A stretch of DNA of 64,000 nucleotides from Anaeramoeba ignava BMAN. Taxonomy: Eukaryota; Protista; Anaeramoebae. Under the pieces are notes generated by a model. That model was not told the origin of the DNA, ran no database searches, and was given only the letters and a program-made list of their open reading frames with translations. The DNA lies in contig JAPDFW010000078.1 of NCBI GenBank assembly GCA_028826165.1, positions 310,001 to 374,000 of the forward strand, in the 5' to 3' direction. A program made the translations under genes and the position numbers. The stretch's first letter is position 1; every line of letters begins with the position of its first letter. Shown here one piece after another: positions 1,095 through 64,000 of the stretch.

Positions 1095-1269
1095 TTTCTA
1101 TCTTTTACATTTATTTTCCAAGTTTAATCTTAATCCACTTTTTTTTTTTTTTTTACTTTCTTTTTTTTACTTTTGAACTTCTTTTTTTCTCTTTTTTTTT
1201 GTCTTTCTTTTTGAATTCTCAAAAAAAAAAATTAATTCAATTTTTTTAATTCAATTTTTTTTAATTTTT

Positions 1270-3942: not shown

Positions 3943-3985
3943 TTTTTTAAAAATTAAAATTAAAAAATAAAAATGAAAAATTTTT

Positions 3986-15161: not shown

Positions 15162-15229
15162 CCTTTTTGTTTTGAAAGAAAAAAGAAAAAAGAAAAAAGA
15201 AAAAAATGATTTGTTGGAAAAGAAAATTA

Positions 15230-17670: not shown

Positions 17671-17918
17671 TTTCTAATAGATTTATGAAGGAATATTAGA
17701 GAATTAGAAAAGAAATTGAAGAAAAAAGAAAAAGGAAATTTTTTTTTAATTTAATTTAATTTAATTTAAAATTTTTTTTTTTGTTTTTGGGGGCATAGTT
17801 AAAAAAATAAATTAATAAAAAAAAAAATAAATAAAAAAAAATTTTTTTTTAATTTTTTTTTTTCATTTTTTTTCATTTCAAAAAAAAAAATTATAAATTT
17901 TAAATAAATAATTTTAAA

Positions 17919-18269
17919 ATGGGTTCTATTTGGAGAAGTCATCCCAAAAAATATGGAAAAGGAGGAAGAAGATGGTTTGCAAATAAAATTAAATAAATAA
18001 AATTTAATAAAAATAATAAAATTAAATAAAATTTAATAAAATTAAATAAAATTAAATAAAAAATATATATTAAAATATAAAAGCCGAAGATGTGGAAATC
18101 ATAGAGCAATTATTCGTAAATATGGTTTAGATATTTGCAGAAGATGCTTTCGTGAAAATGCTGCTTTAATTGGATTCAAAAAGGTTTATATTTTTTTATA
18201 TTAAAAATTCTATTTAAATTAAAAATTCAAAAAAATTTTTTTTTATATTTCTTTTATTAGTATCGATAA
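17919..18269 (+). CDS. RPS29: 40S ribosomal protein S29 (uS14); exons 17919-17974, 18084-18183, 18261-18269
   Basis: Two GT-AG introns give [54 protein letters not shown] with the C-x2-C...C-x2-C zinc finger. Missed by the ORF track. Confidence 0.97.
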
Positions 18270-43985: not shown

Positions 43986-44002
43986 TGAAAAAAAAGGGAA
44001 AA

Positions 44003-46335
44003 ATGAATCAAAACCAAAATCAAAACGAATTACAAAAACTTAAAGAATTTTTAATAAAAAAACATCAGAAACAAATTTTATCAATATTTAATAAAAAAAA
44101 AACATCAGATATCCAAATTTATTGTGGAATTGATAAAAGAATACTTTATTGCCATAAATCCATTTTGACTGCTCGTTCATTAACTTTTTTAACCAAAATT
44201 TTTGAAAAACAACAGACAAAATTAACATTTAATAATTTTCATTCAAATATTGTTACACCAATAATGGAATATATTTATAGTGGAGAATTATCTTTTAATA
44301 AAGAAGAATTTGATAAATATTGGGAATTTGCTAATCAAAATAAGTTAAATGATGTTAAAAAACAAATTGAACTTGAAATGAAAGAATATCTACAACTTGA
44401 TAATATTGCTATCATTTATTTCAAAAGTCAAAACATTTCATCTAAATTTCTTATTGAAAAATGCGAAGAATTTATTATTCCAAATATTCAACAAATTATT
44501 CAAAGATTTGATTTCAAAAATTCACAACTTGAACAAAATATCAGTTTTATTGGATTAATTTCCTTACATCAATCAATTCAAAACAAATTTCAATTATTAC
44601 AACTTTTTCAACAAAAATGGAAAGAAAATTCCCAAGAAAACATTTACAAATTATTACAAAAACAAAATAAAGAAGGATTAAACCGAAATTCATTAATTAA
44701 ATTAAACCAAAACGAAACTACTAATTCTCAAGAAAAAGAAGAATATTTTGATAATGATAAATTCTTTTCAATTTTATTCACACAAATTCAACAAACACAA
44801 ACATTTAATTTTCAACAATTTCAACAAATCAAAAAAAAATCATTTAATTTAAATGAAACCAAATCCATTTTATTAAATTCAAATATTGAAGAAGAACTTA
44901 AAGAAGAAGACAAAAGAATAATATCTTATTATAACTTCAATTCAATTAAATATCAAACAGAAAAAAGAATTGAAGAAAAAAAAGAACAAATTAAATCAGA
45001 AACAAGAAAATTAAAAAGGAAAAAAGAAAAAATTGAACAAATGAAACAAAAACAAAAACAAGAAATTACTCAATCATTAGATGAAGCAAAAATTTATTTT
45101 ACAAAACTTAAAAATTCAATTCAAGAAAATGATAAAGGTATAATTTTTTTCAATTTTTAAAAATAAAAATAAAAACAAAAATCATTTTATTTTATTTAAA
45201 TTATTTATTTAACAAAAATAATAGATGAAACAAAAGAATTAATGAAAATTGATATTTCTTTAATTTTTGAATCTATGAATAATTTTCCAACAAATGAATT
45301 TATTCAAGAAAATTGTTGTTTAGCTTTAAGAAAATTTACTGATAAAAGAAAAGAGAGTAAAAACTTTTTTACAAAAACAAAAATTAAGTTTTTAAATTTA
45401 GATTTTATTTATTAACAAAAAAATCTTTTCAATTTTATTATTTAAATTTTCTTTCTTTCTTTTTCTTTTTTGTTTTTACAAAAAAAAAACCAAAACAAAT
45501 AATAATTATCAATTTAAAATAGGAATTTCATTTAATTTACCAAATTTAAATGGATTTGATTTAATTATCAAAGCAATGAATAATTTCCCATTTAACAGAT
45601 TTCTTCAACTTCAATCTATTTTAATTATTATTAATATTGGAAAAGAAAACGGTAAATTCAAAATTAAAAATTAAAAACAAAAATAAATTAATTTTCATTT
45701 TTTTTTTGAAATATAAAAAATAAAAAAGAAAACAAAACACAAATTGAAACCAATTCTAGAATTGATACAATAATTACAACAATGATTAATTTTACAAATA
45801 AAGATACTGAAATTTATAACAAAGGAATTGAAGCTTTAGGAGTTCTAGGTTTAGAAAAAAAAGGTAAATTTCTTCTCATATTTATTATTTCACAAACAAA
45901 ATATAAAATTATTTTGATTGAATATAAATTTATTTCAATTTGAAAAACAAATATAAATATTAATTTTTATTAAATTTCATAAAACAAAATAGAGATTCAA
46001 AAACTATTCAAACAAAAGAAAAGTAAAATTAATTAAAACAACAAAACAACAAAATAACTATTTTTTTATTAAAATCTTTCTAAATATAAAAAACAAATAT
46101 AAATACAATTTAATTTAATTTAATTTAATTTTATTTTTGATTTAGACATTACTGAAAAAGAAGAAAAGAAATGGCAATCATTCAAACACAAATATGAAAA
46201 ATCAAAACATGTAAATAATACAACAAAAATTTATTTATTTTAATTTAAAAATAAATTTTCTTTTTTAAAAATTAATTTTTATTTTTTTTTTTTTTTTTTT
46301 TATTTTATTAGGGAGAAAAGGTTCGTTTTTATTAA
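44003..46335 (+). CDS. BTB/BACK + coiled coil + ARM-like repeat protein; exons 44003-45137, 45225-45356, 45523-45651, 45729-45863, 45993-46022, 46146-46210, 46312-46335 (last exon may instead end at 46320 and splice onward)
   Basis: SDIQI...[12 protein letters not shown]...MEYIYSG (BTB). Three phase-1 exons each encode one ARM-like unit ([19 protein letters not shown]; [12 protein letters not shown]; TMINF...GIEALGVL). All introns are GT-AG and frame-consistent. Confidence 0.8.
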
Positions 46336-46509
46336 TTCATTTCAAAATATAAAAATATAAAAATATAATTTATTTCTATTTATTTCAATTTTCAAACGAA
46401 TTTACAAAAAAATTGAAAATGATTGATTCATTGATAATATTTTTTTTGAACATCTTTTCCATAATTTCCAACCTAAAATATATTACATTTTCGTTCTATT
46501 CAAATTTAG

Positions 46510-46608
46510 GAAACTATCTTCCATTTCTTTTCAAAAAAGAAGCAAAAAATTGATTTAGGAATTTTGCACTATTTACTGAAACAAAGATATGATCTGAATG
46601 AACTTTTT
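46510..46608 (+). CDS. Divergent ankyrin-repeat exon candidate; donor site not visible
   Basis: TAG at 46507-46509, then ETIFHFFSKKKQKIDLGILHYLLKQRYDLNEL; where the GT is expected there is a T run. Confidence 0.5.
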
Positions 46609-46669
46609 TTTTCAAAAAAACACAAAAAAATTATTTTTCTTTTTAAATTAAAAATAAATAATAAATTAG

Positions 46670-46672
46670 GAT
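46670..46672 (+). other. 3-nt microexon candidate GAT (Asp)
   Basis: TTAG|GAT|GTAATT, 134 nt upstream of the ankyrin exon at 46807. Confidence 0.7.
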
Positions 46673-46806
46673 GTAATTTTTAATTTTAAATAACAAAAAT
46701 ATAAGAGAAAATTATTTAAAATATAAATTAAAGAGAAATTTATTTTTTAATTTAATTTAATTTAATTTAATTTAATTTAATTTATTATTTCAAAACAAAA
46801 AAAAAG

Positions 46807-46902
46807 TGGTCTCCAGTTCATTATTTATGTAGGAATGAATCAATTACATTTGATATGATTAAATTATTAGTTGATAATGGAGCTAATTTTAATTTAAGTG
46901 GA
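46807..46902 (+). CDS. Single ankyrin-repeat exon, 96 nt, phase 0-0
   Basis: AAAAG|TGG...GGA|GTAAGT; translates [32 protein letters not shown]. Confidence 0.88.
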
Positions 46903-49900
46903 GTAAGTTTTTAATTAATTAATTAATTTATTTTCTTTTTCAAAATATTAATAATAATTTTATAATAAGATATTTCATTTCCATTTTTAAATAAACATAA
47001 ACATAAACAAAAACAATATTTTTATTTCAATTATTTTATTAATTAAAACAAAACAATTTTGAATTTTTTTTAAAATTAATAAGAATATAATCAAAAAAAA
47101 GAAATAAATTTTAATTATAATTTTAATTATAATTTTTATTCCAAAAAAAAAATCAAAATAATATTTATATTTATTATTTGATTATTATATTTCAATTTAC
47201 TTTTAATCAAAAAAATAAATTCAATTTCAAATTCAATTTAATATTCAATTATTTTCCAAAAAAAGAAATATTTTCATTTTAATTCATTTTTTTTTAAAAA
47301 TTTTCAACTTTAAAAATTTGAAAAGAAAAAAAAAGAAAAAGAAAAAATTTAAAATTAATATTTAATTAATTAATTATAATTCCTCTCTTTTTTTATTTTG
47401 TTTTTATTTTATTCAGATTTACAAATTTAATTCAATTTTGTTTTATTCTCAATTCAAATTCTTTCTTTTTTATTTTATTTTATTTTATTTTATTTTATTT
47501 TATTTTATTTAAAATTTTGGATATTAAATCAAGAAAAGAAATTTATTAATTTATTAATTTTATAATTTTAGAAAAAAAAAACAAAAAGGAATTGAAATAA
47601 TATTTTCCAATTTAATCAAAAAAAAATTATTAATTTAATTTAATTTAATTTAATTTAATTTAAGATATTTATTTTTTTATTGAAAACTTCAAAATTAAAC
47701 AAAAAAAAATTAATTCAAAAAAAAATTTATTCTTGTAAAATTTTGTTTTTGTTTTTGTTTTTGTTTTTCAAATTTTATACATTTTTTTTGGTTTCTCTCT
47801 TGTAATACAATAAAATTCATTTTTTATAAAACTTCAATTTTTCATTTGGTTTTTTTTCCCTTTTTGAAAATAATTATTATAAATTGAAATTTGAATTGTT
47901 TTAGTGAATTAATTATATTTGACAAAAATATTGTTTTATAATGAAAAATAAAATATTTTTTTCTTTACAAGAGTTTATTGATAAATTATTACACAAAAAA
48001 AATGGAAAAATCTTCAAGAATCAAATCAAATTCTATTTTCAGTTATTATTTCTTTAGTTATTTTATAATCCATTTTTATTGAGATTAAAAATATTTTGTA
48101 TAGAAAAAACACTTCTCATACTCTAAATATGTATAATGATAATAAATGATGTTAAAAAAAATTGTTTTTAAATTTAAGAGAGTTATAATAATATTTATTT
48201 ATTTAAACAGTATAAAGACTCAAGAATAAAGAGATGATATAATTTTCTGTAAACATAAAAAAATTTAATCATTTTTATTTATAAACCTCTTTTTGATATT
48301 CTCAATATAATGATTTATATCCAGTTTAAATTTACATTTGGATTAAATATCTAATAATGATTGAATTGAGTTTCTATCCTTATCATTAACAATTAAAGAA
48401 ATTGATATTTTGTCTTTCCATTTAGATGTAAAATTATTGATTTATTCTTTATATTCTTATTTATTCCTTTAAAATATTCTTTCCTCAAAATATGAATTGA
48501 ATCAAAAAAAAATTTTGTTTTTTCCAGTTTTTATATATTCAAAAATTATTATTAATTCTCTTATATTGAAACCTTTTCTTGATAAATCACAAATGATTTG
48601 TAATTGAATATTCATCAAATCAATTTCTAAATAAATTATTATTAAATTATTGAAAAAAAAATACAACTTTTCAAATAATTCCTTATCTTTTCTATTGTAA
48701 TTTAAATTATATTCAAAAGTTGTTAAAATTTCTTTTCCAATATCTACAGTTATTTTCTCAAATTGATTTTCAGTTAAAAAATGAATATTAATTAAACTAA
48801 AAAATTTACCTATAAGAATTGAAAAAAAAAATAATAAACTTCTTAAAATGAAATAATTTTTAATCAAATAAATATCCAAATTATGAATATTATAAAGGGA
48901 AATATCTGGAATAAATTCATTAATTTTATTCAGAAAAGAAGATATCATTTCTTTAATTTTTTTTTGTAAATTATTAATTATCTAAATAACAAAGAAAAAA
49001 ACAAAAGATGAAAATTGATTTTTTTTTTGATTATTATAAAATATTATTTAATTTAATAAAATAATCTCTTTCTTAAAAAAAATCAATAAATCTCTTATTA
49101 TCCTGATCTAAAAAAAATCTAAAAAAAAATAATTAAATAAAAATTAAATGATCTATATTAAGTTTTACATTAGTTAATAAATTAGAATTTTTTATATAAA
49201 TTTTTTCAATTTAGATATTGAAATTTTTTTCTAAAAGAAAACAAATTTAATAATTGAGGATTATCAAGAAAAACTAATCTCTTTCATCCAATAAAATATT
49301 TTATCCAAATTATAATAATTTGATTAATATTTTTCATTATATATTTTGAACTAAGATCTCAAAATATTTTTGAAATAAAAATTATTATAATTTCTATTTC
49401 TTCTTAATAATTTAATTTTTTTTTGGAAAGATGAAAATTTTATTGATTTCTTTTTTTGATTTCATTTTTGTTTTTTTGTTTGAAAATAAATTTAATATAG
49501 AAAATTTGAGTTTCCACATATATATTTTATTCAAAGGAATGAAAAAATTTTTCTTTTTTTTTTTCAATAAATTGAGACTCATTTAACATAATAATAACAA
49601 TATATATATATACTTTCTTCCAAATAAAAATATTTATAAAATAAACAAAAAAATTTTATTTCTATTCAAATCAAAATTTAATTCACTTCATTTTTATTTA
49701 ACAAAAGATTAACATTAAATTCAGAAATTAAAATTTTATTCTTTTCTTTTTTTTTCCAAACAAAAAAAATTTAAATTTAAATTAAATTCAATTCAAAAAT
49801 AAAATTTATTTGTTATTGTTTTTGATAATGAAAAATGAAAATGGAAATTAAATGAAAATTAGTTTTATTTAATTTTTCTTTTTTTTCAAAAATCACACAC

Positions 49901-50297
49901 ATAAAAAAAATTTAAAAAAAAACAAAAATTTATATTTTTATTATCTATATTTTACATTTAATTTTGGATTATTTTTATTTTCAAAAACAACAAAAAACAA
50001 AACAAAATTTTTATTCTCTTTTTTTCCAAGATTAATAAAATGAATAAATTATTTAATAAATTTACTTAGAAAAAAATAAAAAATATTATTATTATTATTA
50101 TTTTAATATTAAATCAAATTTAAATAAAGAAAAATAAAAATAATTGATTTATTTATTTTTGAAATGAAAATTTAAATTATTTTCCTTTTTTCTTTTTCTT
50201 TCCAATTTTATTAAATAAATCAAATTTAAATTTAATTTTCTTTATTCAAAATAATAATAATAATAATTTATTTATTTATTTAAATAAAAAATAATAG

Positions 50298-50564
50298 AGA
50301 GTAATTATTTCCAAAAATTAAATTAAATAATAATCAAAATTATATTTTTTTTAAATTTAAATTGTTTTTTATTTTAATAAAATTTTATTTTTAAAAATAA
50401 ATCTAATAATAATAATAGTGGGTAAATTTTATTTAATAATTTAATTTTCCATTTTATTTTTAATTTGGAAAACAAAATTTATGAAAATTAAAAACAAAAA
50501 ATTTTTGAATTTTTTTCTAAAACTTTTTTTTTTGAATAATAAATAAAATTAAATAAAATAGGCT
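50298..50564 (+). other. Cluster of 3-nt microexon candidates: AGA 50298-50300, TGG 50419-50421, GCT 50562-50564
   Basis: TAG|AGA|GTAATT, TAG|TGG|GTAAAT, TAG|GCT|GTAAAA, spaced 121 and 143 nt. Confidence 0.72.
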
Positions 50565-53500
50565 GTAAAATATTAATAATAAAAATTAAATAATAAATTT
50601 ATTAGATATTATTTTATAAAATTTAAATATGTAAAAAGAAAGATTTGAATTATATTTTTTTTTAAATATTTTCTTTTCTCTTTTATATTTAAATTTTTTT
50701 TATTTTTTTCTTTTCAAAAAAAAACACAAGTTTTACAAAATAATTCTTAAAATTTAAAATTAAAATTAAATTAAATTAAATTGGAAAAGAAAAGAAAACA
50801 ATTTTATTTTTTGAATTTGAAATTATTATCTTGTCTTTTCTTTTGTAAAAATTTTTTAAAAAAAAAGAAGATAATTTATTATTATTATTTCATTTTTTTG
50901 ATTATTTTCATTTTTATCATAATTTTTTTATTTTTATTTTCAATTTTAAAAATTAAAATGAATTAAAATGAATTAAGGAATAAATATTATTTTCTTTATT
51001 TGTAAATAATATTAATAAAATTTAATAAATTTAAAAAAGAAAAAAAAAGAACAAAAGAATAAGATGAATGAATATGTATTTATTTGAAATTTTTATTCAA
51101 AATAATAATAATAATAAAGAAAAAAATAAATTTTATTCAATTTTTCTTTATTAAATTTTGTTTTAATTTAAATTCCAATAAGAAAAAGAAAAAGAAAAAT
51201 ATCAAATTTATTTTCTTTTTTTTCAAATTTAAATTTCAAAATAAAAAATGAATTTTTCTTTCTTTTCATTTATTTATAATATAAAATAAATCTCTTACAA
51301 GTAAAAAAAATGGATTTTTTATTCAAATTTCTTTTTTTAATTCTTTTTTTTTAATTCTAATTAATATCTTTAAATTCCAAAAAACAAAAACAAAAACAAA
51401 AAAATAATTATTAATAATTAAACAAATTTTGATTTTTAAAAAAAATAGGAGTAAATAAATAAATAAATAGAAATTATTCAAAACTCTTTTATTTCTTTTT
51501 TATTTCTTTTATTTTTTATTTCAATAATAATTTATTATTAATTTAAATTTAAATTTATTCATAATCCAAAAAAAAAAGAAAAAAGAAATAAATATTTATC
51601 AAATTAATTATTTTTTTTTTGAAATTAGATTTAATTAATATTTATATTTATATTTATATTTATATTTATATATGTTAGATAAATGAAAATAAATTGAATT
51701 AACTTTATAATTTTAATTTAAAAACAAATAAACAAAAATATTAAAAAAATTTATTAATATTAAATAATTTCTTTCTTTACTTTTTTTTATTAATTAAAAT
51801 AGATGTAAATAATAATAAAATTAAAATTAAAATTTTTGTTATTTTTATTTTTCTTTTCTCCAATTTTTTTTTGAGAATAAAATTATTATTATTTAATCAA
51901 ATATATATAAATATCATTAAATCATTTCATTCTGAAAGAAAAACAAAATGAATATTATTCCATTTTATTTTAATTAAAATAAAATTATTTATTTTTTTTT
52001 ACTTTATCAAATCAATAAATTATTATAAATTATTTTTTTTTGAAGTTTTATAATTTAATAACATTTCTCTGAATATAAATAAAAATAAATATATAAAATA
52101 TTTTGAATAATTTTATTTTTATAAATAATTAAAATAAAAATGAAATTTTCAAATCAAATCAAATAAAAAAATATTAAAATTAAAAAGGAAATTTTTTTTT
52201 CAAATTAAATTAGGATAAATAAATTGTTTTATTTTTATTTTTATTTATTTATTATTTCCCAAAAAAAATATAATTAAATTTTTAAAAAATAAATAAAAGA
52301 AGAATTGAATTAAAAATTAAATCTAAATAAGTTTTCTTTCATTTCTTTCATTTCTTTCATTTTTATTTTAGAAAAGAAGGAAAATAATAAATTTTTATAT
52401 AAATAAATTAAATTATTTTATAAAACAAAAAATTTTAAAAACAAAATTGAAATTAGATTTTTATTAAATTTAAATAAATTTGTGGAAAAAAAAAAGAATA
52501 AGAATATTAAATTATTCTTTTTTTTTTTTTTTTTCTTTTTTCTTTTGTATTTTTAATTTACAATAATCAAATTAATTTTTTTTAAAAGAAAATATTTCAT
52601 CAATTTATTAATTACAAATAAAGATATTTTCAAATAATTTATTTTAATAAATAATCATAATAATAAAAAAAATAAATAAAAAGAAATTAATAAATAATAT
52701 AATTTCATTTCTTTTTCCCAAATTTAATCTAATTTAATTTAATCTTTTTCTTTTTCTTTTTCTTTCAAAAAAAAAATAAGAAAAAAAAATATTTTATTTT
52801 CAAATTTGAAAAGAGATTTATTTTTTAAAAAAAAAGAAGAAATTAAGAGAAAAAATATATTATTATTAATATTATTAATAAATTTAAGAAATGTGAAAAA
52901 AAAATATTTATTTTAAATATTATCATAAATTCTCCTATATTTATATTTTAAGTAAAACAAAAATTTTCAAAAAAAATAAAAAAATCAAATTATTTCTTTT
53001 TCTTTATAAATATTATTATTATTATTTATAAGAAGAAAATCTTATTTAATTTTTTTTTTGATTATCAATTTTTTGTTTTTAAAAGAAAAATAAAAATAAT
53101 AAAAATAATAAATGAAATGTAAATAATTTATTTATTTATATTTACAGAGATAAAAATAAAAATTGATAAATAAATAATTTCTTATTTACTTTTTTATTTA
53201 AATTTAAATAATAATAAAATTTAATTAAAATACCTAATAATAATAAAAATAATATAAATTACAAAAAACAAAAAACAAAAAACAAATTTTCTTTTGTTTT
53301 TCAATTTTTTATTCTTAATTTTAATTAAATTTTCAAATCTAAAATAAAAGAAAAAAAAGAAAAAAAGAAAATATAATTTTGTTTTTGATAAATTATTTTT
53401 CCAAAATTATTATTTAATAATAAATAATAATAAGTAATAAAATCCTTTTATTTTTATTTTATATTTTAATTTATTAATCATTTCAATATTTAAAATTTTT

Positions 53501-53578
53501 TCCTTTTTTTTATTTTTAAAAACAAAAACAAAAATCAAAATAAAAACTAATTTTTTTTTGATTAACAAAATTTTTTAG

Positions 53579-54029
53579 AAAGTAAAATAATAAAATTAAA
53601 AAATAAAAACAAAATTTATTTATTATTTATTATTTTAAAAATCTTTTTCTTTCTCTAATAATAAAAATTTTAAATAATTTTATTTAAAAAATTAAAAAAA
53701 AAAGAATGTAAAATAAATTTCAAATCAAAAATCAAAACAAGAAAATTATAATTATAATTATAATTATAATTTTTTGTTTTTATATTTAAAAAATTGAAAA
53801 AATTATTTATTATTATTAAAAATAAATGTAAAAAAAATAGATTAATAATAATAATTTAATACTAAATAAATTTAATTTTTATTTTGAAATTAAAATAGGA
53901 TGTAAAATATTAAAATTTTTTTTATTTAAAAAAATAATTTGATTATTATTATTATTTAAAAATAATTTACATTTTGAAATAATAATAAAAAATATTTTTT
54001 AATTATTTGTTAATAATATTTAAATAGGA
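53579..54029 (+). other. Cluster of microexon candidates: AAA 53579-53581, AAT 53705-53707, GAT 53899-53901, and 2-nt GA 54028-54029
   Basis: TAG|AAA|GTAAAA, AAG|AAT|GTAAAA, TAG|GAT|GTAAAA, TAG|GA|GTAAAA. Confidence 0.68.
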
Positions 54030-54659
54030 GTAAAAATATTAAAACAAAATTAATTAATTAATTTTAAAAAGAGAAATAGATAATGAAAAGAAATAAAAAA
54101 ATTTTACTTTTTTTTGTTTTTAAAATTGGAAAATAAAATTTAAATTGAAAAGAAAAAAATTGAAAAAAATTTTATTTATAATTAAATACATAAGTTATTA
54201 TTATTATTTGATATTAATTTTATTTGATATTTTTTTTAATTATAATTTTCCATTTTTTTTTAATCAAAAAAAAAAGATTATTTTTATTACTTATATATTA
54301 TAAAAAAAGTAAATAATTTAAATTAAAAATTAAAATTGAAAAAAAAAAGATTAAATTAAATTTAATTAAATTATTGATAAATATTTTTTATAAGTAAAAA
54401 AAAATGAAATAATTTAAATGAGAAATAATTAATCAAAAAATATTTTTATATTTTATTCATTTATTATTCATATAAAAAAAAATCAAAAAAAAAAAGAAAA
54501 GAAAAGAAAAGGAAAACAAAAATTTCTTAAATATCAAATAAATGAATAAAAAATAAAAATGATTTAATTTAGATAAATAATCATTTAATTTTTTGTTTTG
54601 TTTTTAATTAAAAAAGAAAAAAACAAAATTAAATATAAAATAAAAAAAATAAAAATAAA

Positions 54660-55125
54660 ATATAAAATAAAATAAATATAAATATAAAAATAAAATAAAT
54701 ATAAATATAAATATAAATAAATATAAATAAATATAAATATAATATAAAAATAAAATATAAATAAAAAAAATAAAATAAATATAAATATAAATATAAATAT
54801 AAATATAAAATAAAAAAAAAATAAAAAATAAATATAAATATAAATATAAAATAAATATAAATATAAATAAAAAAATATATAAATAAATATAAATATAAAT
54901 ATAAATATAAATATAAAATAAATATAAATATAAATATAAATATAAATATAAATATAAATATAAATATAAATATAAATATAAATATAAATATAAATATAAA
55001 TATAAATATAAATATAAATATAAATATAAATATAAATATAAATATAAATATAAATATAAATATAAATATAAATATAAATATAAATATAAATATAATAAAA
55101 TAAAAAATATAAATATAAATATAAA
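54660..55125. repeat. (AAATAT)n microsatellite
   Basis: Nearly perfect from about 54920 to 55095. Confidence 0.9.
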
Positions 55126-55556
55126 TTGATTAAAATTGATTGATTTTGATTTTGATTTTTGATTTTTATTTTATTGATTTTTTTTTTTTGTTTTTTTTTT
55201 TAAATTTAAAAAAAGAAAAAAAAAAAAAAGAAAATATTTAATTAAATTTAATTCCTTTCCTCTTTTTTAATTGAATTTTATTTATTTTGAAAAAAAAATA
55301 TAAAAAATATAAAAAAATAATTTTTTGTTTTTTGTTTCCAAAAGGAAAATAATTAATTTTAAATTATAATTATTTTATTTTATTTTTTTAAAATTATTCT
55401 ATTCTTATTTTAATCTCTTTTCAATAATATTTTATTATTTTTATTCAATATCAAAACTTAAGAAAAAAAATAAATAAATTTCTTTTTTTCAATTTAAATT
55501 TTTTTATTAAATTTAATCTTTATTTCCCATTTCAAAAAAAATTTTTATTAAAATAG

Positions 55557-55559
55557 TAT
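55557..55559 (+). other. 3-nt microexon candidate TAT (Tyr)
   Basis: ATAG|TAT|GTAAAT. Confidence 0.62.
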
Positions 55560-58500
55560 GTAAATAAAAATATAAAAATTGATTTCTTTTCTCTTTTATT
55601 TTCCATTTTTTTTAAAAGAAAAATTAATTTTTCAAAATTATTTAAAATAAATATAATTTAATTTTGAATATTAATATAAAATTTATTGTTTTTATTTTTA
55701 ATTTTTTTATTAGAAAATTTTTGAATAAAAATAAAAAAAATATTTAAATTTAATTAATTAAATGAATAAATTTTTTCTTTTTAAATAATTTTATTATTTT
55801 TATCAAATTTAAAATTAAGAAATATTTTATCATTTCATTTTATTTTTATTACTTTTTAATTAATAAATTAATTTAATTTTTTGTTTTTTATTTTTAAAAA
55901 AAATGAATAAAAAAGATTTTTTGGGAATAAAAATAATAAAAATAATAAAATAATAAATAATATTTTGGTTTTTTTTTTAAAACAAAAATAAGATATTCTT
56001 TTACTTTTTATCTTTATTTTTTTTTTTTATTTTTATTTTTGAAATTAAATATAATAATTTTATTCTTATTTATTTTATATTAATTCCAAAAAAAAAATAA
56101 TTAGAAAAAAAAAGAAAAGAATTTATTTAAATTAAAAATGGAATGAAGAAAAAAATTTAATTATTTTTATTCCTCTTTTTTTTGTTTTTGTTTTATTAAA
56201 TTTATCAAAAAAATAATTAATAATATTTAATAAATCATTATCTTTGAGAAATAAATTAAGATAAAGAAAGAAAATCTAATTATTAATTTATTTTCCATTT
56301 TTTATTTTCATTTTATTATTTTAGAAAATAAAATAATTCCAAAAAAAACAACACAATTTAAAATAATAATAATAATAAATTTGTTTTAATTTTAATTAGG
56401 AAAAAAATTAGAAAAAGAATAAAAATAAAAATAAAAATAAAAATAAAAATATTATTAAATTATCAAAATTAAATTAGATTTTAATAAATTATTTAAATAG
56501 ATATTTTTTTTATAAGAATAATTTCATTCTTTAAATAAAAAAATAAAAAATAATAACAATTTAAATTAATTCTATTTTATAAAAGAAAAAAAAATTTATA
56601 TTTATTTATGTATTTATTAAATGTTTTTTTTTCTCTTTAAATGAAAAATAAAATAAAACAAAATTATATATTTTCATTTTCATTTTCATTTCTTTAAAGA
56701 ATATAAAAAGAAATCAAAAACAAAAAATTTTTATATTTGATATTAAAATTCTCATATATATTTATTTTTCTTTTTATTTCTTAATTTATTTTCAAAAAAT
56801 AAATAATGTGAAATATTTTCTTTTATCTTTATTTTTTAATCTATTTCTTTTTTTTTTTTTCTAATAATTTTATTATGTTATCAATATCTTAAATTCTTAT
56901 TTTTATTTTTATAAATTATATATATATATATAAATAAATGATTTTAAATTGAAAATAATTATATTATATTTATCAAAACAGAAATATTTTAGATTTATTA
57001 ATTCATAAATTTGTTTGATTTTATCAATTTTTTATTTTGAATTTTTTTATTTTTTATTTTGATAAATTTAAAATATATTTGAATATATAAATATAAAGGG
57101 AAATTCCTTTTATTTTGAAATTTTTGATTTTTATAAATTTGATATTTATAATAACACAAAAAAAAAGTATAAACAAAAAAAAATAATTAAATAAATAAAT
57201 ATTCCAAATTAATTATATTCAAAATCATCTTTTTTTATTTATTTCAATAAAAAAAGAGAGTTAAAAATATTATTATTCTTTTTATTATTTAATTTAATTT
57301 AATTTAATTTAATTTAATTTAATTTAATTTAATTTCTTTATTTTTGAGAAATGATTAATTATTAAATTATTTCTTGTTTTTTTTTGTTCTTATTTAAGGT
57401 AAATTTAAAACAAAATTTACATAAATTCCTTAATATTTTATTGATAAGGATAAATCCCAAATTTAATATTTTCCTTCTTCATAATTTTTTTTGTAATTAT
57501 TTTTATATTCATTTTTATATTTTAAATTCTTAAGTTAATTAAATAATATTTTCTTTTTTTTTTGTGTTTTTTTTGTATAAATTAATAATATTTAAATTAA
57601 GAAATTGTAAAATTTACTCTTAAAAAATATTGGGAAAATTGAATTTATAAAATTAAAAAAAAATTTTAATAATAATAATATTTTTAATATCCTTGATAAT
57701 TATGAGAAATTCTTTTTCTTTTTAGAAATAATTTCAATTTTTTTTTAAATTGATTAATTAATAAATCTTATAAATTTTCTTTTGTAAATTGATTAAGATA
57801 ATAAAATAAGATTTAAATTCCTTTTTATTTCTTTTTCTTTTAGTAAATAAATAAATATTTTTATAGATTTAATTTTTATTTATTAGGAAAATATTTGATT
57901 TATTTTTTCTCTTTCTCTTTTTTTTTTCAATTTAAATTTGTTATAAATTTAATATGTTATTATTTTAATTAAGGAAGAGAATATCTTCAAAATTTATTAA
58001 TTAATCAAATTAAAAATTAAATTAAATTGATTGAATATATTTCTTCTGAAAATTCATTTTATTATTTTTAAAAATTTGAAAATTTCTTATTAAAACAAAA
58101 ACAAATTTTATTATTATTATTATTATTTTTTTATTTTTTAATAATTTTATTTGAAAATATTTTTATGTTAAATTTCTTTTGAATTTAATATAATTAATTA
58201 ATTTTATTTTTAAAAAAAAGAAAGAGAAATTTTTTAATATTAAATTTAACTTTCTAAATTCCCTAAGTTGAAATTAATTAATTAATTAATTAAAATTTGA
58301 TATTGAATTATAATATAGATACATAATTTTCACTTATTATTATTATTGTTCTTTTTTTTTCATAATTTAATCAAAAAATATTTTATATTATTAATATTAT
58401 ATAATTTTGAAATATCAAATATTTAATTTATAATAATTTTATTAATGATATTAATTATCAAATTTTTTATTTTTCAAAAATTAAAAATAAAAATAAAAAA

Positions 58501-59293
58501 TTTGTGTTTTTTTTCTCTCAGATTAATATCCTTGTTTATAATATAAAAAAAAAGTTGTTTTTTGTTTTGTATATAATTACATTTATTACATAATTTAAAT
58601 GTGAAAAAAAAATATTCAAAATTTAATTTCAAGAGTTTTTGTTTTGTTTTGTTTTTTTGATTTAATAAATTTAAGATTTAATTAGTAAATTTTTGGAATT
58701 AATTAATTAATTAATAAATGAATATTGGAATAAAGAATTTTATGAAAAAAAAATGAATTTGGAAATATTGTATAATTTTATTTGGAAAATAATTATATAA
58801 ATAAGATAATATTAATATTATCAAGAAAATATTTATTTTTTATATTTATTTTTTATTAATTTATATAATTATTCAAATTCTTCTATTTGAAAAAAAAAAG
58901 AATATTAAATATTTTTTTCTCTTACTTAAAAAATTTCAAGATTTTACATAAACAAAAAATAATAATAATTATAATAATTAAATATTTAATTTCAGAATAT
59001 TCAATAATTTGATTATCAATTTCTAAATTTTGATTATTTTCTTCTTAAATAAATTCTAAATTTTCCAAGATTTAAAAAATTTTTTTTATTTCAATTAATT
59101 TTTATTTTGGATTATTATTATAATTATAATAATAATAATAATTTATCAAAAAAAAATTGATATAAAAAAAAATATTAATTTATTCAAGAAACAAAATAAT
59201 ATTTTTATAAAGAAAAAACAAATTATTTAAATTTTTCTTTTTTTTTTTTAATTTTAATTTTAATTTTAATTTTAATTAAAAAAAAAACTTTAG

Positions 59294-59417
59294 TATGTAA
59301 CAAAAAATTGATTTTTAATAATAAATAAATAAAAAATTTTTTTAATTAATTAATTATTTGTTTTTATTTAAAATATATTTTTGATTTTTATTCAATTTAA
59401 TAAAATAATATAAGGAT
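59294..59417 (+). other. 3-nt microexon candidates TAT 59294-59296 and GAT 59415-59417
   Basis: TAG|TAT|GTAACA and TAAG|GAT|GTAAAA, 121 nt apart, immediately before the ankyrin exon at 59499. Confidence 0.72.
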
Positions 59418-59498
59418 GTAAAAAACAAAAAAAATAAATAGAAATAATTTTAATTTTATTTTTTGATTTAAAAAAACAAAAACAAAAACAAAAAAAAG

Positions 59499-59594
59499 TA
59501 TACACCTTTACATGATTTATGTAGAAACACTTCAATTACAAAAGAGATGATTGAATTATTATTTGATAAAGGAGCTGATTTTCATATTCAAATT
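59499..59594 (+). CDS. Single ankyrin-repeat exon, 96 nt, phase 0-0
   Basis: AAAAG|TAT...ATT|GTAAAT; translates YTPLHDLCRNTSITKEMIELLFDKGADFHIQI, colinear with 46807-46902. Confidence 0.9.
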
Positions 59595-62500
59595 GTAAAT
59601 AAAATTTTGAAAAAAAAAACATACAAAAAAAAAGAAAAAGAAAAAATAAGATATTTTTAAATTTAAATTTAAAATAAATTATTGAAGAAAACAAAATAAA
59701 AAAAAAGAATTGATTGATTATTAATAGATTTATTTACATTTAATAAATTATTTAAAAAAGAAAATAAATTTCTCAATAATTTTCCTTTTATTTCCTTTTA
59801 TACAAATTTTCTCAATTTTTTTTTTCTTAATCATATTAACATCAACCATTTATATTCAAAATTAAGAAAAAAAAAATCAAAATCAAAAATCAAAAAAAAC
59901 AAAAAAAAAAAAAAATCAAAGAAAAGAAAATAAAAATTTTTAAAGAAAATCAAATTTAAAAAGAGTTTTTGTTTATTTTATTTTATTGAATTTTATTTCT
60001 TTTTATTTTATAAGAGATTGAAGGAAAAAAATGTTATAAATTGGAGAAATTTAAAATTTGGAAATTTGTTAATTTTTCTTTTCTTTCAATTATTCTACTT
60101 TTTTTTCTAACAATTATCCTTTCTAATTATATCTTTTTGATTTTATTTTTAACCTCAATATCTTAATCAATAAAAGGTTTTTATTTTTTATTTTTATTTT
60201 TATTTTTTATTTTTTTATAAAAATATAGATATTCATATTTCAATTCTTTTATATTTTGTTTAATAGTTATTTTTTTTGTTATTAGATTTTATCCAATGAA
60301 TATTATTTTTAAAATATAATAAATATAATATTTGTAATATTCTTTCTCTAAATAATATAAGAAATATCTCAATAAATATCTAAAATGAGTATCTCTTTAT
60401 AATTTAATGTTTTGAAACAAAATGTATCAATTTATTGTGAAATATCAACTTAATATTCAATTTTGATTATATTTATTTTTCTAAAATTATAAACAAATTT
60501 TTTAATTTGAAAACAAAAAAAAAATCAAGAAAAACTTTTAATTTCATATTTTTTGTAAAATGAAATGTGAATTATTATTTAATTTTGATAATTATTTTCA
60601 TTTTTAATATAATTATTATTCTTAATTTTCATTTAATTTTGATTATCATTATTATTATTATATTTTTTTTAATTATATTTTTTTTATTGATTTTGTTATA
60701 ATAAAATATATATACAGGAAAAGAATAAAATTCTTGAAGAATTTCAATAACATTACTAAAGTTTAGATGTATAAATTTTTTTATAAACTCTATAAAATTA
60801 GTATATTCTTCTTTTAATATTAACCTAAATATTGTTAATCAATTAATTAATTAATTTAATTTTATATAAATTCATCTCTTTCTTCTTTTTTCTTTTTTTC
60901 TTTTTCTTTTTACAAATTTAATCTAATCAAAACTTGAAATATTACAACCATAAAACATTTATTTCATGAGTTTTGTATTCCTTTCAAAATTAACTTCGAA
61001 ACACAAGAATTTAAATTTTGAGAAAATGAAATGTGTAAAAAAAATATGAAAAAATTTTTTGATTTAATAATCAATTTATCTGTTTGATTATTATTAGTTA
61101 ATTTAACATCTTCTAATTTAGATTGATTTTGAGAGAAAGATAAATTGAAATTTTGAAATTTATTTTCTTTTCTTTTTATCTTGGAATATTTAAGTTTTGT
61201 GATTAAATTTATTCATTTTCATTTCAACTTGAATTTTCAATATAATAATTATAATTATAATTAGAATGATTTGAAGTAATTTATTGATCTTTTTTTTTAC
61301 TTATTTGAGATTTTTTGTATTTTTTTTTCCTTTTTTTTTTAATTTAAAATTTGAGAAAGTTGTATAAAATGTAAAAATATTTCAGTATTCTTATAATTCT
61401 CCTTAATAAACATGAATTAAAATTATAAAATATTTTAATTTCCCATAAAAAAATTATCTTTAATTATTTTATTATTACCTAACTTATTATTGAATTATAT
61501 TTTCCTCTTGGATAATTATCCATTGTTGTTTTTTTTTCTTTATAAAAGAGAATTTTATAACAAAATTTTATGGATATATTGAGATCCTATATTTACTAAA
61601 ATTGAAAAAAAATACTTTGTTTTTTTTTCAAATTTTTTATTTATTTAAGTTATTATTTCTTTTTCTTTTTGATTTTTGTTTTTAATTTTCTTCTATTTTC
61701 ATTAATTTATAGAATTTCAAAGTTTTTTTTTATATCATAATGAAAACCTGAATTTCAGTTATACAATATATAATTAATAAATTTGGAGAATATATCTTTA
61801 ATGATTTTAAGTAATTATATTTGTGTTTATCAAAATGGAATATATTATGAATATTCAAATTCTTTGGTTTGAAACACTTTTGAACAGTAACATTAATCAC
61901 ACAAATAATATAATGGAAAATTAAAGAATTTTATATTAAAATTTTATATTAATTTATTTTGAAAATTCTAATATATTTACTATTCTTTAATAATAATATT
62001 TTCAATTATTTTTGAGATTTCATTAATAAAATCAAAAATCAAAAAAAAAAAAAAAAAATAATAATAATAATAATATTTAAGAAGAAAAAGAAGAAATGAA
62101 AATGAAAAAAAAATATTAGAAAAAACTTTATAAAATTCCTGATTTAAATTTTTACAAAGAGAAAATAAAGATCAATAACAATATCCTTATTAATAAAAAT
62201 AAAAATAAAAAATAAATTTATTTTTTTTCTAATTTTTCAAAGATATAATATTTTTGAAGGTAATTGAGAATGATTAAGAGAATATATTTATTTTTTTGAA
62301 AAATTAATTTATTTTGTTATTTCTGATAAAATATTAGTAAATATTAATTTTTTTTTGTTAGATTATAAATTGAAATAAATTCTTCTATTGAAAAAATTGA
62401 TTTTTATTTTATTTTTTTATTTTTTCATTAATGGGAATAATTCCATAATATTTTTAAGAGAATTTTCCTTTTTTTTTATTATTAAAAAATTATTTTAATT

Positions 62501-63011
62501 TGTTTTGAATGTTTATCTATTTTATTAAATATTTCTTCATTAATTTTTTTTTAAGTTAAATTATTTAATTTCAAAATAAAGAAAATTTACAATTCTGTGA
62601 ATAAATATATTAATAAAGTGAATAAAATTATTAAGATATGAATAGATAAAAAAGAAGAATAAATTAATTTTAATTTATTTTTTTTGATAAAATTTTAAAA
62701 AAAAAAGGGAAAATTATTATTTTAATCTCTTGAATATCTATAATATTTTTTTTTTGAATTTAAATATTAATAAAAGTAAGAATAAAAATAAAAATAAAAA
62801 GAAATAAATTTTTGAAAATTATTAGAAATATAATAATAATTATTATTTTTATTAATTTTATATTTATAGATTATTATTTCATCTTTTCATTTTTATTTTA
62901 AATAATTTAATTAAGGAAATACACACAAAAAAAATAAATACACAATTTTTTCTTCAAAATAAACAATAAAAAAAAATTAATAAATTTATAAAATTTTTAA
63001 ATTTTAAATAG

Positions 63012-63674
63012 AAAGTAAATTATTTATTTAATAATAATATTTTATTTTATTAATCTTTTTTTTTTACATTTCAAGTCAATATCAAAATAAATTTCTTTTT
63101 CTTTCTTTCTAAATTTTTTTTATGGATAAATATTATTTTTATTTTATATTTTTTTTTATTAATTTTTGGAAAGGAAATAATTAATTAATTAATTAAAAAA
63201 ATAATTTATTCCAATTTTATTCCTCTTTTTGTTTTTTTTCCAAATTAAAATTATTTTTATTAAATAAATATTATTTTTGAAAATAAAACCCAAAAAAAAA
63301 ATAATATAATAAACTTATTATTATTATTTATTTATTTATAATTTAAAATAAAATTCTTAAATAAAAGAAAATAAAAAGAAAATAAAATAAAAGAATTAAT
63401 TAATTTGAATAAAATTTATTTAAATAAAAAAAAACCAATAAATTATTTAAAAATTAAAAATTAAAAATTGAAATTGAAATTGAAATTGAATAAATCTTTT
63501 TTTTTAAAAATTTTAAATTAAATCTAATCTTATTAAAATAATCTTTTTTTTTTCTTTTCAAAATATTAAATAGTCTGTAAATAAATTAATCCCAAAAAAA
63601 AATATTTGAAATTAATAATTTTCTTTCTTTTTATTTATTTTAAATTAAAAATTTTGAATTTTATTAAATAGAGA
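63012..63674 (+). other. 3-nt microexon candidates AAA 63012-63014, TCT 63574-63576, AGA 63672-63674
   Basis: TAG|AAA|GTAAAT, TAG|TCT|GTAAAT, TAG|AGA|GTAAAT. Confidence 0.68.
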
Positions 63675-64000
63675 GTAAATAATAATTTATTAAAAAAAAA
63701 GAATTTGAAACAAAAACAAATTTTAAATTTTCTTTTTTTTTTTGATTTTTTAAAATCAATTAATTTTAATTTTAATTTTAAAATTTTTTAAATTTTTATA
63801 AAATAATATTTTTTTTAATCAAAATCAAAATGATATTTTAAAAGAAAAAAAAGAAAATAATTTAAGAATTAATAAATTTTTATTTTATGAAATTTAAAAT
63901 TAAAAAATTTTTTAAATTTAAAAAGAATTATTATAAAATAAAATAAATGAAAATTAATTAAAATAAAATAATTTTTAAAGAATTTCTTATTCTAATTATT

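What the first reader, a model, noticed from the sequence alone, without database searches (positions are those of the whole stretch)
46510..63680. Hidden ankyrin gene with arrays of single-codon microexons: a candidate splicing-generated natural DARPin library
Seen: this apparent desert contains two colinear 96-nt phase-0 exons (46807-46902, 59499-59594), each encoding one ankyrin repeat from the residue before (T/S)PxH to three residues after the GAxxN/H motif. They lack exactly the ~3-residue beta-hairpin tip (the x-x-G of D-x-x-G-x-TPLH). Around them are 13 motifs AG-NNN-GTAA, all on +, all sense codons: GAT 46670, AGA 50298, TGG 50419, GCT 50562, AAA 53579, AAT 53705, GAT 53899, TAT 55557, TAT 59294, GAT 59415, AAA 63012, TCT 63574, AGA 63672. 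They often cluster 98-143 nt apart, the size of small introns elsewhere in the window. In a partial by-eye scan I saw no mirror motif (TTAC-NNN-CT), and few with 4-6-nt spacers, in a region where G is rare. Established: the hairpin tip is part of the ankyrin binding surface and is randomised in DARPins; Dscam and schistosome micro-exon genes diversify proteins by exon choice. Inference: nine single-codon cassettes lie between two repeats that need about three, so alternative inclusion would vary the identity and length of the binding loop one amino acid at a time. Gene finders would miss this and predict 32-aa repeats.
Basis: partly seen in the sequence, partly recalled or inferred. Interest (0 to 1): 0.96.

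Follow-up and report, generated by a model that had tools for sequence, protein, structure and literature searches.

The report
Single-codon exon chains in ankyrin gene
The 13 three-base "exons" are real and belong to the ankyrin tail of an Anaeramoeba ignava gene family in which a public transcript of a compact sister gene carries 22 such one-codon exons in genomic order, but this copy is a swollen, partly broken duplicate and nothing supports a splicing-made library.

Summary
Observation confirmed. In 46510-63680 there are 13 AG-NNN-GTAA on +, none on -. Shuffles give 0.8; other spacers give 0-4. The scan has reported this class before on other DNA of this genome (Anaeramoeba ignava), without RNA proof.

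New here:
1. The stretch is the ankyrin tail of the BTB-ARM gene that starts at 44003.
2. Compact paralogs have the same 96-nt ankyrin exons about 1 kb apart, with 7-14 consecutive 3-nt exons between them. Nine between two repeats is therefore the family norm, not an excess.
3. A Trinity/TransDecoder protein of A. ignava (EukProt, P0127) maps onto one compact paralog as 25 exons. Twenty-two are 3 nt, in runs of 14 and 8, all included in genomic order. This is transcript evidence for full inclusion.
4. This copy is one of at least 8 recent duplicates. Its introns are swollen to 0.9-4.1 kb, 6-7 chain sites have 2- or 4-nt spacers (0 of 260 in compact genes), one acceptor is lost, and a sister copy has TGA.
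5. Unexplained: between copies the spacers differ in 17 of 38 comparisons, against 6-9% for intronic 3-mers.

The alternative-splicing library is not supported. No reads could be laid on this locus.

The parts
44003..46210 (+). Upstream exons of the same gene (BTB then ARM-like repeats). By residue mapping of P0001 they are about 44003-45136, 45224-45355, 45525-45650, 45728-45862, 45992-46021 and 46148-46210.
   Evidence: P0001 'protein aardvark [Anaeramoeba ignava]' is 100% identical, Pfam PF00651. Paralog models P0008 and P0009 run from the ARM part straight into the ankyrin exons.
46510..46605 (+). Relic of the ankyrin exon before ANK1 ('ANK0'). The frame is open but no GT donor follows it. 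It lies in a rearranged stretch that only this copy has.
   Evidence: tblastn of P0009 residues 202-234. C42 keeps an intact version with a GT donor at C42 5398-5496. Sequence. Homology of all other copies to this one starts at 46677.
46670..46672 (+). Single-codon site GAT (D) before ANK1.
   Evidence: Across eight copies the state is GAT x2, AGA x5, AAA x1 in otherwise near-identical flanks.
46807..46902 (+). Ankyrin exon ANK1, 96 nt, phase 0.
   Evidence: Present in 8 copies.
48426..48427 (+). AG|AT|GTAAAA, a 2-nt spacer that is invariant in five copies. Its status is unclear (old dead site or chance).
50298..50300 (+). Chain 1, site 1: AGA (R), invariant in 4 copies.
50419..50421 (+). Chain 1, site 2: TGG (W). 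C108 has TGG, C25 has GTG, C42 has TTG.
50562..50564 (+). Chain 1, site 3: GCT (A). C108 and C25 have GCT, C42 has ATT.
51449..51450 (+). Chain 1, site 4: spacer of 2 nt (GA). C25 has GA, C108 has TGA.
51803..51804 (+). Chain 1, site 5: spacer of 2 nt (AT). C108 has CAT, C25 has TTT.
53579..53581 (+). Chain 1, site 6: AAA (K). C108 has CCA.
53705..53707 (+). Chain 1, site 7: AAT (N). C108 has GAT.
53823..53833 (+). Chain 1, site 8: lost here (the acceptor AG is gone). C108 has AG|TGG|GTAA.
53899..53901 (+). Chain 1, site 9: GAT (D), the same in C108.
54028..54029 (+). Chain 1, site 10: spacer of 2 nt (GA). C108 has TTT.
55557..55559 (+). Chain 1, site 11: TAT (Y), the same in C108.
59294..59296 (+). 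Chain 1, site 12: TAT (Y), invariant in 3 copies.
59415..59417 (+). Chain 1, site 13: GAT (D), invariant in 3 copies. The chain end [FY]-D is shared with distant paralogs.
59499..59594 (+). Ankyrin exon ANK2, 96 nt, phase 0.
   Evidence: Copies on C108 and C42.
63012..63014 (+). Chain 2, site 1: AAA (K), the same in C42.
63574..63576 (+). Chain 2, site 2: TCT (S). C42 has GAT.
63672..63674 (+). Chain 2, site 3: AGA (R), the same in C42. The chain goes on beyond the window: 64576 TAT, 67429 AT (2 nt), 68630 AA (2 nt), 71930 GAA, 72109 GATG (4 nt), 72181 AGA, 76301 GGT, then ANK3 at 76410-76505 (window-equivalent numbers on L003/L004).

Best explanation
The stretch is the 3' (ankyrin) part of a BTB-ARM-ankyrin gene of Anaeramoeba ignava. 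In this family each ankyrin repeat is a 96-nt phase-0 exon. The loop to the next repeat is encoded one codon at a time by 3-nt exons, each flanked by its own short intron. In compact paralogs these codon-exons form runs of 7-14 with introns of 54-100 nt. In at least one of those paralogs, all of them are spliced into the mRNA in genomic order (shown there by a transcript-derived protein). The 13 motifs in this window are the colinear counterparts of two such runs: 13 sites between ANK1 and ANK2, and about 10 between ANK2 and ANK3. This particular copy is one of at least eight recent duplicates that lie at contig ends. Its 5' ankyrin exons are deleted or rearranged, and many of its introns have grown to 0.9-4.1 kb. 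About a quarter of its chain sites are no longer 3 nt long. It is therefore most likely a decaying copy, or at best a truncated chimeric one, and not a device for making protein variety by exon choice. Shown: the motifs, their homology to the paralog chains, the transcript evidence in the paralog, and the defects. Inferred: that this copy no longer makes a full ankyrin tail.
For: Motif enrichment and strand bias. Organism and gene: P0001 is 100% identical on the contig of 387,350 nt. ARM-to-ankyrin architecture in P0008 and P0009, and colinear tblastn hits ARM, ANK0, ANK1, ANK2, ANK3. Compact paralogs L011, L012, L015 and L017 have 7-13 AG-NNN-GTA sites between ANK1-like and ANK2-like exons, median intron 72 nt, and chains that start with K/R/Q and end with [FY]-D like this one. 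In compact loci there are 260 k=3 motifs on the gene strand and 0 on the other strand. There are 0 stop triplets among 163 motifs in the four long-chain loci, where about 11% would be expected from the base composition. Transcript evidence: P0127 has EukProt as its only source, with a Trinity/TransDecoder header. It maps to L015 as 25 phase-0 exons, 22 of them 3 nt long, with every residue in order. Decay of this copy: 2-nt spacers at 51449, 51803, 54028, 67429 and 68630; a 4-nt spacer at 72109; a lost acceptor near 53826; an ANK0 exon without a donor; TGA in C108; a 5-kb deletion and a LINE-like insertion in C42; copies C51 and C142 cut off after ANK1. By contrast, none of the 260 sites in compact genes has an off-length spacer in a strong context. 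Intron sizes here are 68-4117 nt.
Against: No RNA or DNA reads could be laid on this locus, so whether it is expressed is unknown. The three ankyrin exons and most splice motifs are intact. At 1.5% divergence between copies, though, intactness says little. The chain-end sites that are conserved in distant paralogs are also invariant among the recent copies (4 of 4, against 4 of 17 other sites in a tally at that stage of the work; the final tally is 10 invariant of 24 sites, so this test is suggestive only). The spacers hold about 31% G+C in a 10% G+C background. Both facts fit recent selection on the codons. In C42 the deletion leaves a clean five-codon chain 1 (R L I Y D). The spacers change far faster than neutral sequence, which simple decay does not explain.
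Confidence: 0.68

Rival explanations
1. The copy is still a working gene. All 3-nt sites are spliced in, off-length sites are skipped, and the loop codons are under strong diversifying selection. The eight or more copies would then form a germline repertoire of ankyrin binding loops on BTB (Cul3-adaptor-like) proteins.
For: Spacers differ in 17 of 38 copy-to-copy comparisons, against 5.6-9.3% for intronic 3-mers. All changes alter the amino acid. The chain ends are invariant. Spacer G+C is about 31%. The only double change inside an ankyrin exon (AGA to CAA, R to Q, in ANK2) falls at a surface position of the first helix (position assigned from my own knowledge of ankyrin/DARPin design).
Against: The 2-nt and 4-nt spacers and a TGA sit in the same strong AAATAG|..|GTAAA context as the good sites, and none of 260 sites in compact genes is like that. 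If those sites were used, this copy would hit a stop after the fourth codon of chain 1 (my reading of the spacers). About half of the changes replace 2-3 bases or change the length at once, which looks like single events rather than stepwise selection. Introns of 3-4 kb are far outside the family's 54-100 nt.
Confidence: 0.2
2. One reading: the single-codon exons are cassettes that are included in varying subsets, so one gene makes many loop variants.
For: Every exon is phase 0 and 3 nt long, so any subset keeps the frame. Skipping is mechanically easy. It could not be tested at this locus.
Against: The paralog transcript carries all 14 and all 8 codons in order, and its 90% cluster has no second member. 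Chains of 7-14 are the norm in the same intervals. First and last positions are conserved across paralogs. This copy carries frame-breaking sites.
Confidence: 0.07
3. The motifs are stepping stones for removing very long introns piece by piece (recursive splicing), not coding exons.
For: Long introns in a genome whose introns are normally under 100 nt. One site is exactly AG|GTAAAT in a C42 copy.
Against: A 3-nt spacer does not rebuild a 5' splice site at the junction, so the triplet would stay in the mRNA. The same sites occur in compact paralogs with 54-100-nt introns, where no stepping stone is needed, and there they are in the transcript-derived protein.
Confidence: 0.02
4. Chance, or a motif unrelated to splicing.
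For: None beyond the low-complexity background.
Against: 13 observed against 0.77 expected, with 0 of 2000 shuffles reaching 13. Strict strand bias. Position-by-position homology to paralog chains.
Confidence: 0.01

Closest known systems
Isolated 3-nt and smaller microexons of animals and plants (cytohesin-1, RPS24, Drosophila homothorax, MAP4K5; 1-nt exons of plant APC11 and VPS55)
   Same: Exons of 1-3 nt flanked by ordinary splice sites, missed by annotation and by standard read mappers (PMC6314551, PMC7392893, PMC8632122, PMC8831610, PMC12207440).
   Different: Those are single exons, or at most two or three neighbouring microexons per gene. Here runs of 7-14 consecutive 3-nt exons encode a whole loop, and 22 lie in the last 25 exons of one transcript. 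I found no paper that describes such runs.
Schistosome micro-exon genes and Dscam exon clusters
   Same: Many small symmetric exons in a row.
   Different: In those systems variation comes from documented alternative inclusion or mutually exclusive choice (my own knowledge, not checked in the papers held here). Here the one transcript available shows complete inclusion, and the variation seen is between gene copies in the genome, not between isoforms.
Recursive splice sites (ratchet points) in long Drosophila introns
   Same: A 3' and a 5' splice site placed next to each other inside long introns.
   Different: Ratchet points have no spacer and leave nothing in the mRNA (my own knowledge). These have 3 nt that are translated in the paralog.
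Ankyrin repeat proteins and designed ankyrin repeat proteins (DARPins)
   Same: Pfam Ank/Ank_3 match. The hairpin between repeats is the part encoded by the codon-exons. For ordinary repeats of the family, L-E-G plus K-D-G restores the usual loop length, and a Logan-derived relative (P0013) has loops of that length in line.
   Different: Loops after ANK1-ANK3 are 7-14 residues longer than the canonical hairpin and differ completely between paralogs.
Duplicated, fast-changing gene families at chromosome or contig ends
   Same: At least 8 copies of about 98.5% identity, several at contig ends, with deletions, a LINE-like insertion and satellite growth.
   Different: The differences between copies are concentrated in the 2-4 bases between two splice sites. 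I know of no report of such a pattern.

Membership tests
Ankyrin repeat (Pfam PF00023 / PF13606) | Match to the repeat profile, including the (T/S)PxH start and the G-x-(D/N)-x-N end | tested here: met
   Ank_3 scores 22.3, 18.7 and 22.4 bits (cut-off 22.3) for the three 32-aa exons, over profile positions 3-29 of 30. The paralog P0009 has Ank_2 at 8.6e-16.
Ankyrin repeat (Pfam PF00023 / PF13606) | Repeats in tandem with about 33-residue periodicity | tested here: inconclusive
   The exons are 32 aa. With 3 codon-exons the ordinary repeats of the family give 35 aa. The three repeats here have 7-14 extra loop residues in paralogs. No fold was predicted, because joined models were not to be submitted.
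Coding microexon | Flanked by a 3' and a 5' splice site on the gene strand | tested here: met
   AG and GTAA at all 13 sites, usually AAATAG and GTAAAT/GTAAAA.
Coding microexon | Length keeps the reading frame | tested here: inconclusive
   17 sites of this copy have 3 nt. Five have 2 nt, one has 4 nt and one is lost. In compact paralogs all 260 have 3 nt.
Coding microexon | No stop codons among the triplets | tested here: met
   0 of 17 here. 0 of 163 in the four long-chain paralog loci, where about 11% is expected from composition. One TGA in sister copy C108.
Coding microexon | Present in mature mRNA | tested here: inconclusive
   Met for the paralog on C73: P0127, a Trinity/TransDecoder protein from EukProt, holds 22 of them in order.
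Alternative-cassette diversity system (Dscam / micro-exon-gene type) | More cassettes than the protein needs | tested here: not met
   7-14 per interval in every compact paralog, and 13 sites in sister copy C108.
Alternative-cassette diversity system (Dscam / micro-exon-gene type) | Transcripts with differing subsets of cassettes | tested here: inconclusive
   Only one transcript-derived protein was found. It has the full set and is alone in its 90% cluster. No reads were available.
Recursive splice site | AG directly followed by GT, so that a 5' splice site is rebuilt after the first step | tested here: not met
   The spacer is 3 nt. k=0 occurs only twice on +, in weak contexts, and is invariant.
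Pseudogene / decaying duplicate | Disabling lesions compared with intact paralogs | tested here: met
   Off-length spacers at 6-7 of about 24 sites against 0 of 260. A lost acceptor. ANK0 without a donor. The 5' ankyrin exons that C42 still has are missing here. TGA in C108.
Pseudogene / decaying duplicate | Neutral rate of change | tested here: not met
   Spacers change about five to eight times more often than intronic 3-mers, while the adjoining AG/GTAA changed at only one site.

The most novel reading that the evidence does not exclude
The few bases between the two splice sites of a codon-exon are rewritten as a block, either by a process bounded by the splice sites or by extreme diversifying selection. 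The single-codon architecture would then serve as a substrate for changing ankyrin binding loops one residue at a time across a family of at least eight BTB-ARM-ankyrin loci. Variable inclusion could add to this.
Probability: 0.2. Interest if true: 0.92.

Novelty: new variant of a known kind. Interest (0 to 1): 0.82.

Why it matters
Exons of 3 nt are known only as rare single cases. Here one mRNA of a free-living anaerobic amoeba appears to be assembled from runs of 14 and 8 consecutive one-codon exons separated by introns of 54-89 nt. The 5' splice-site region of one intron then overlaps the 3' splice site of the previous one, so splicing has to proceed in an ordered or re-iterated way. That challenges current ideas about the minimum exon size and about exon and intron definition. 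The published annotation joins the large exons directly, so the proteome of this organism is wrong at thousands of loop residues. The published intron count (more than 30,000, per 10.64898/2026.04.11.717937) is probably too low. The faster-than-neutral change of the spacer bases between recent copies, if reads confirm it, would be a new pattern of sequence evolution tied to splice sites.

Tried and rejected
The Rfam and tandem-repeat scans were split around those places. Local scripts did align whole contigs that contain them.
- Transcript-derived proteins of this copy: a search with the BTB exon, and one with the ANK1 end of P0001, found only NCBI models.
- Spliced models were never joined. 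Exons were searched and mapped one by one by reference.
- Close duplicates of the compact long-chain genes, to test spacer variability there: none found.
- General hot spot between two nearby G's: rejected. G-NNN-G inner bases change at 0-1.4%, and 3-mers with G/C at 5.5-8.8%.
- Sequencing or polishing artefact at the motif: unlikely. The compact family C71/C20 shows triplet change of only 0.7-2.1 times the intron rate across three comparisons, with conserved splice sites. The contexts are identical in all copies. The assembly was polished with Nanopolish and Pilon. This is not excluded without reads.
- Extra microexons with non-GTA donors: 4 on + and 4 on -, so no enrichment.
- Rfam: no match in 43000-50164 or 50206-64000.
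- Minus-strand ORF at 48505-48948: no Pfam match, and found only in the copies of this same block.
- Telomere-type repeats at the ends of the contigs: none.
- Anaeramoeba papers do not mention microexons.


Full report
What the window is. The window is G000:C79:310001-374000 of a 42.8-Mb assembly. The ORF at 43985-45160 is 100% identical to 'protein aardvark [Anaeramoeba ignava]' (P0001, 577 aa) on a contig of 387,350 nt, which is the length of C79. The published A. ignava BMAN genome is 80.65% A+T, with introns at 91.86% A+T (PMC11550330). That fits the 6-14% G+C of the stretch. Earlier notes of this scan had already reported single-codon exons elsewhere in this genome, each time without RNA evidence. 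I used them as leads only.

- Both 96-nt exons are open, preceded by AG and followed by GTAAGT or GTAAAT. They match Pfam Ank_3/Ank at or near the cut-off.
Spacers of 0-12 nt other than 3 give 0-4 hits on either strand.
- Two thousand dinucleotide-preserving shuffles give 0.77 on average, never more than 6.
- Most sites sit in AAATAG|NNN|GTAAAT or GTAAAA, and their flanks are not copies of each other.

The gene.
- The public model P0001 runs from a BTB domain through ARM-like repeats. It then joins 46210 directly to the ankyrin exon at 46807 and reads through that exon's donor to a stop.
- Two annotated paralogs show that ARM followed by ankyrin is the family's architecture. In P0008 (C71) and P0009 (C93) the ARM part continues into four to nine ankyrin exons of 32 aa that the annotators joined directly.
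- tblastn of P0009 on this contig gives colinear hits: ARM exons, a relic of the preceding ankyrin exon at 46510-46605 (no donor), ANK1 at 46807, ANK2 at 59499 and ANK3 at window-equivalent 76410.
- The contig ends at 77350, before a fourth repeat and the tail.

Compact paralogs give the key to the nine triplets.
- Searches of the genome with the two exons and their flanks found more distant copies in which the ANK1-like and ANK2-like exons lie only about 1 kb apart.
- In four such loci (L011, L012, L015, L017) the interval is filled by 7-13 consecutive AG-NNN-GTA sites. The next interval, ANK2 to ANK3, holds 10-13. The median intron is 72 nt.
- The chains begin with K, R or Q, and those between ANK1 and ANK2 end with an aromatic residue and D. 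The chain here does the same: R W A K N D Y Y D.
- Over seven compact loci there are 260 such motifs on the gene strand and none on the other strand. The few hits at other spacings are by-products, either AGA triplets or the ends of normal exons.
- None of 163 triplets in the four long-chain loci is a stop codon, although base composition predicts about 11%.
- In the ordinary repeats of the family three codon-exons, typically K-D-G, follow L-E-G. This restores the canonical loop length. A relative from a Logan assembly (P0013) has loops of that length encoded in line.

Transcript evidence.
- A full HMMER search of 1.84 billion representative proteins with P0009 returned P0127 (131 aa).
- Its only source is EukProt EP01156, Anaeramoeba ignava, with the header c20457_g1_i1.p2, 'ORF type:complete'. 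From my own knowledge, this is the naming used by Trinity contigs and TransDecoder ORFs, so the protein comes from assembled RNA.
- A spliced mapping that allows only AG/GT phase-0 introns places every residue on L015 (C73:172001-182000, + strand) in 25 exons: the end of the ANK2 exon; 14 consecutive 3-nt exons (S M K P D K D F S A S P R F); the ANK3 exon; 8 consecutive 3-nt exons (V D S E W I R G); and a last exon of 183 nt followed by a stop. Introns are 54-89 nt.
- One of the 14, the M codon, has a GTGAAT donor and had escaped my motif scan. The transcript therefore predicted a genomic site rather than the reverse.
- In a sister gene, then, the complete ordered set of codon-exons is in the mRNA. 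The 90% cluster of P0127 has no second member, so no shorter isoform ORF is on record.
- The ORF starts at an internal Met of ANK2 and is called complete. This suggests that the contig is not fully spliced further upstream. That is inference.

This copy, site by site.
- ANK1 and its surroundings occur in eight copies of 84-92% identity including gaps: C79, C42, C108, C25, C57, C51, C142 and C137. Several end at contig ends. Substitution divergence in the aligned blocks is 1.0-1.8%.
- C108 keeps 13 sites between ANK1 and ANK2: R W A TGA H P D W D F Y Y D.
- This copy has nine of them as 3-nt spacers, three as 2-nt spacers (51449 GA, 51803 AT, 54028 GA), and one with the acceptor lost (about 53826).
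- Between ANK2 and ANK3 it has seven 3-nt sites, two 2-nt sites and one 4-nt site.
- If the off-length sites were spliced like the others, the frame would break. By my reading of the spacers, a stop follows the fourth codon of chain 1.
- The introns are 68-4117 nt. Part of the growth is a microsatellite, (AAATAT)n at 54626-55126.
- C42 lacks 50887-57409 and so has only R L I Y D. It carries a LINE-like ORF in chain 2 and a decayed extra copy of ANK3. It still has upstream ankyrin exons that this copy has lost.
- C51 and C142 break off after ANK1.
- Taken together this looks like a duplicated block in decay, not a tuned device.

An unexplained feature.
- Between the recent copies, the bases between AG and GTAA differ in 17 of 38 site comparisons, and 14 of 24 sites vary.
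- The changes are often 2-3 bases at once, or a change of length: GCT/ATT, AAA/CCA, TCT/GAT, TAT/AGT, AGA/GAT/AAA, TGG/GTG/TTG, CAT/AT/TTT, TGA/GA, TTT/GA, GATG/TTG, and GGT/GTT/deleted.
- The 40-60 nt on either side show no base substitutions at most sites and at most one to three, plus small indels, at a few. The AG/GTAA letters changed at one site only.
- Random intronic 3-mers differ in 5.6-9.3% of cases, and the figure is the same for 3-mers with one or two G/C. Bases between two G's three apart elsewhere change at 0-1.4%.
- The excess is significant even against a generous 15% baseline (P about 1e-5).
- In the compact family on C71/C20, triplets change at 0.7-2.1 times the intron rate in three comparisons, while the splice sites are conserved. 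The motif is therefore not error-prone as such.
- Selection on loop codons fits three facts: the invariant chain ends, the G+C richness of the spacers, and the purely amino-acid-changing substitutions. It does not fit the 2-nt, 4-nt and TGA states.
- Decay fits those states but not a rate above neutral.
- The block-wise changes suggest single replacement events bounded by the splice sites. I cannot decide between these readings without reads.

The hidden ankyrin array and its codon-exons are real. The premise that nine cassettes serve a loop needing three fails, because the family encodes 7-14 residues in these intervals and a transcript shows them all included. The variation I can see is between gene copies, not between isoforms. 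Alternative inclusion at this locus remains untested.

Comparison with what is known. Single exons of 1-3 nt are documented in animals and plants, with at most two or three neighbouring microexons per gene (PMC8831610, PMC12207440, PMC7392893, PMC6314551). Papers on Anaeramoeba do not mention microexons. Runs of 7-14 consecutive 3-nt exons are therefore an extreme new variant of a known kind.

Limits.
All mapping was exon by exon, by reference.

Noticed in passing
L015:4533-6590 (G000:C73:176533-178590, + strand): A transcript-derived protein (P0127, EukProt A. ignava c20457_g1_i1.p2) maps here as 25 exons, 22 of them 3 nt long, in runs of 14 and 8. As far as its notes show, this is the first RNA-level support for the single-codon exon class in this scan.
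   Followed up: yes
window 30433-32979 (+): An 848-aa ORF at about 39% G+C, an island in a genome of about 19% G+C. Long antisense ORFs overlap it and it has no Pfam match. It could be foreign or mobile DNA.
   Followed up: partly
L009 about 516-3400 (G000:C42:40516-43400, minus strand): A LINE-like ORF (endonuclease/reverse-transcriptase-like, with a zinc-knuckle-like end) sits inside the ANK2-ANK3 interval of copy C42 and is absent from this copy.
   Followed up: partly
window 1270-6732 (-): Three neighbouring ankyrin-BTB genes are long uninterrupted ORFs whose hairpin loops are encoded in line. The contrast with the codon-exon architecture 40 kb away shows that the latter is a property of certain gene families, not of ankyrin repeats as such.
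   Followed up: no
window 48505-48948 (-): A 148-aa ORF inside the 3.4-kb intron after ANK1. It is kept open in C79, C25, C108 and C142 and broken in C57 and C42. It has no Pfam match and occurs nowhere else in the genome.
   Followed up: partly
window 59520-59525 (codon AGA in ANK2): The only difference in ANK2 between this copy and C42/C108 is a two-base change in one codon (AGA to CAA, R to Q). It is another multi-base change in an otherwise identical exon.
   Followed up: partly
window 54626-55126; L003 about 2222-3263 (window-equivalent 66222-67263): An (AAATAT)n microsatellite and a satellite of about 1 kb account for part of the intron swelling. The satellite also occurs upstream of the array on C108.
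   Followed up: partly
Proteins P0002-P0005 (paralogs of the BTB-ARM gene): Their public models end in a short peptide that is the ANK0 exon read into a stop. The annotated ends of these genes are therefore probably artefacts of the missed ankyrin tail, or real truncations.
   Followed up: partly
window 14000-18000 and 26300-27400: Long simple repeats with extreme G/C skew (G+C 7-15%, skew up to 0.88). They give spurious ORFs of repeating dipeptides.
   Followed up: no
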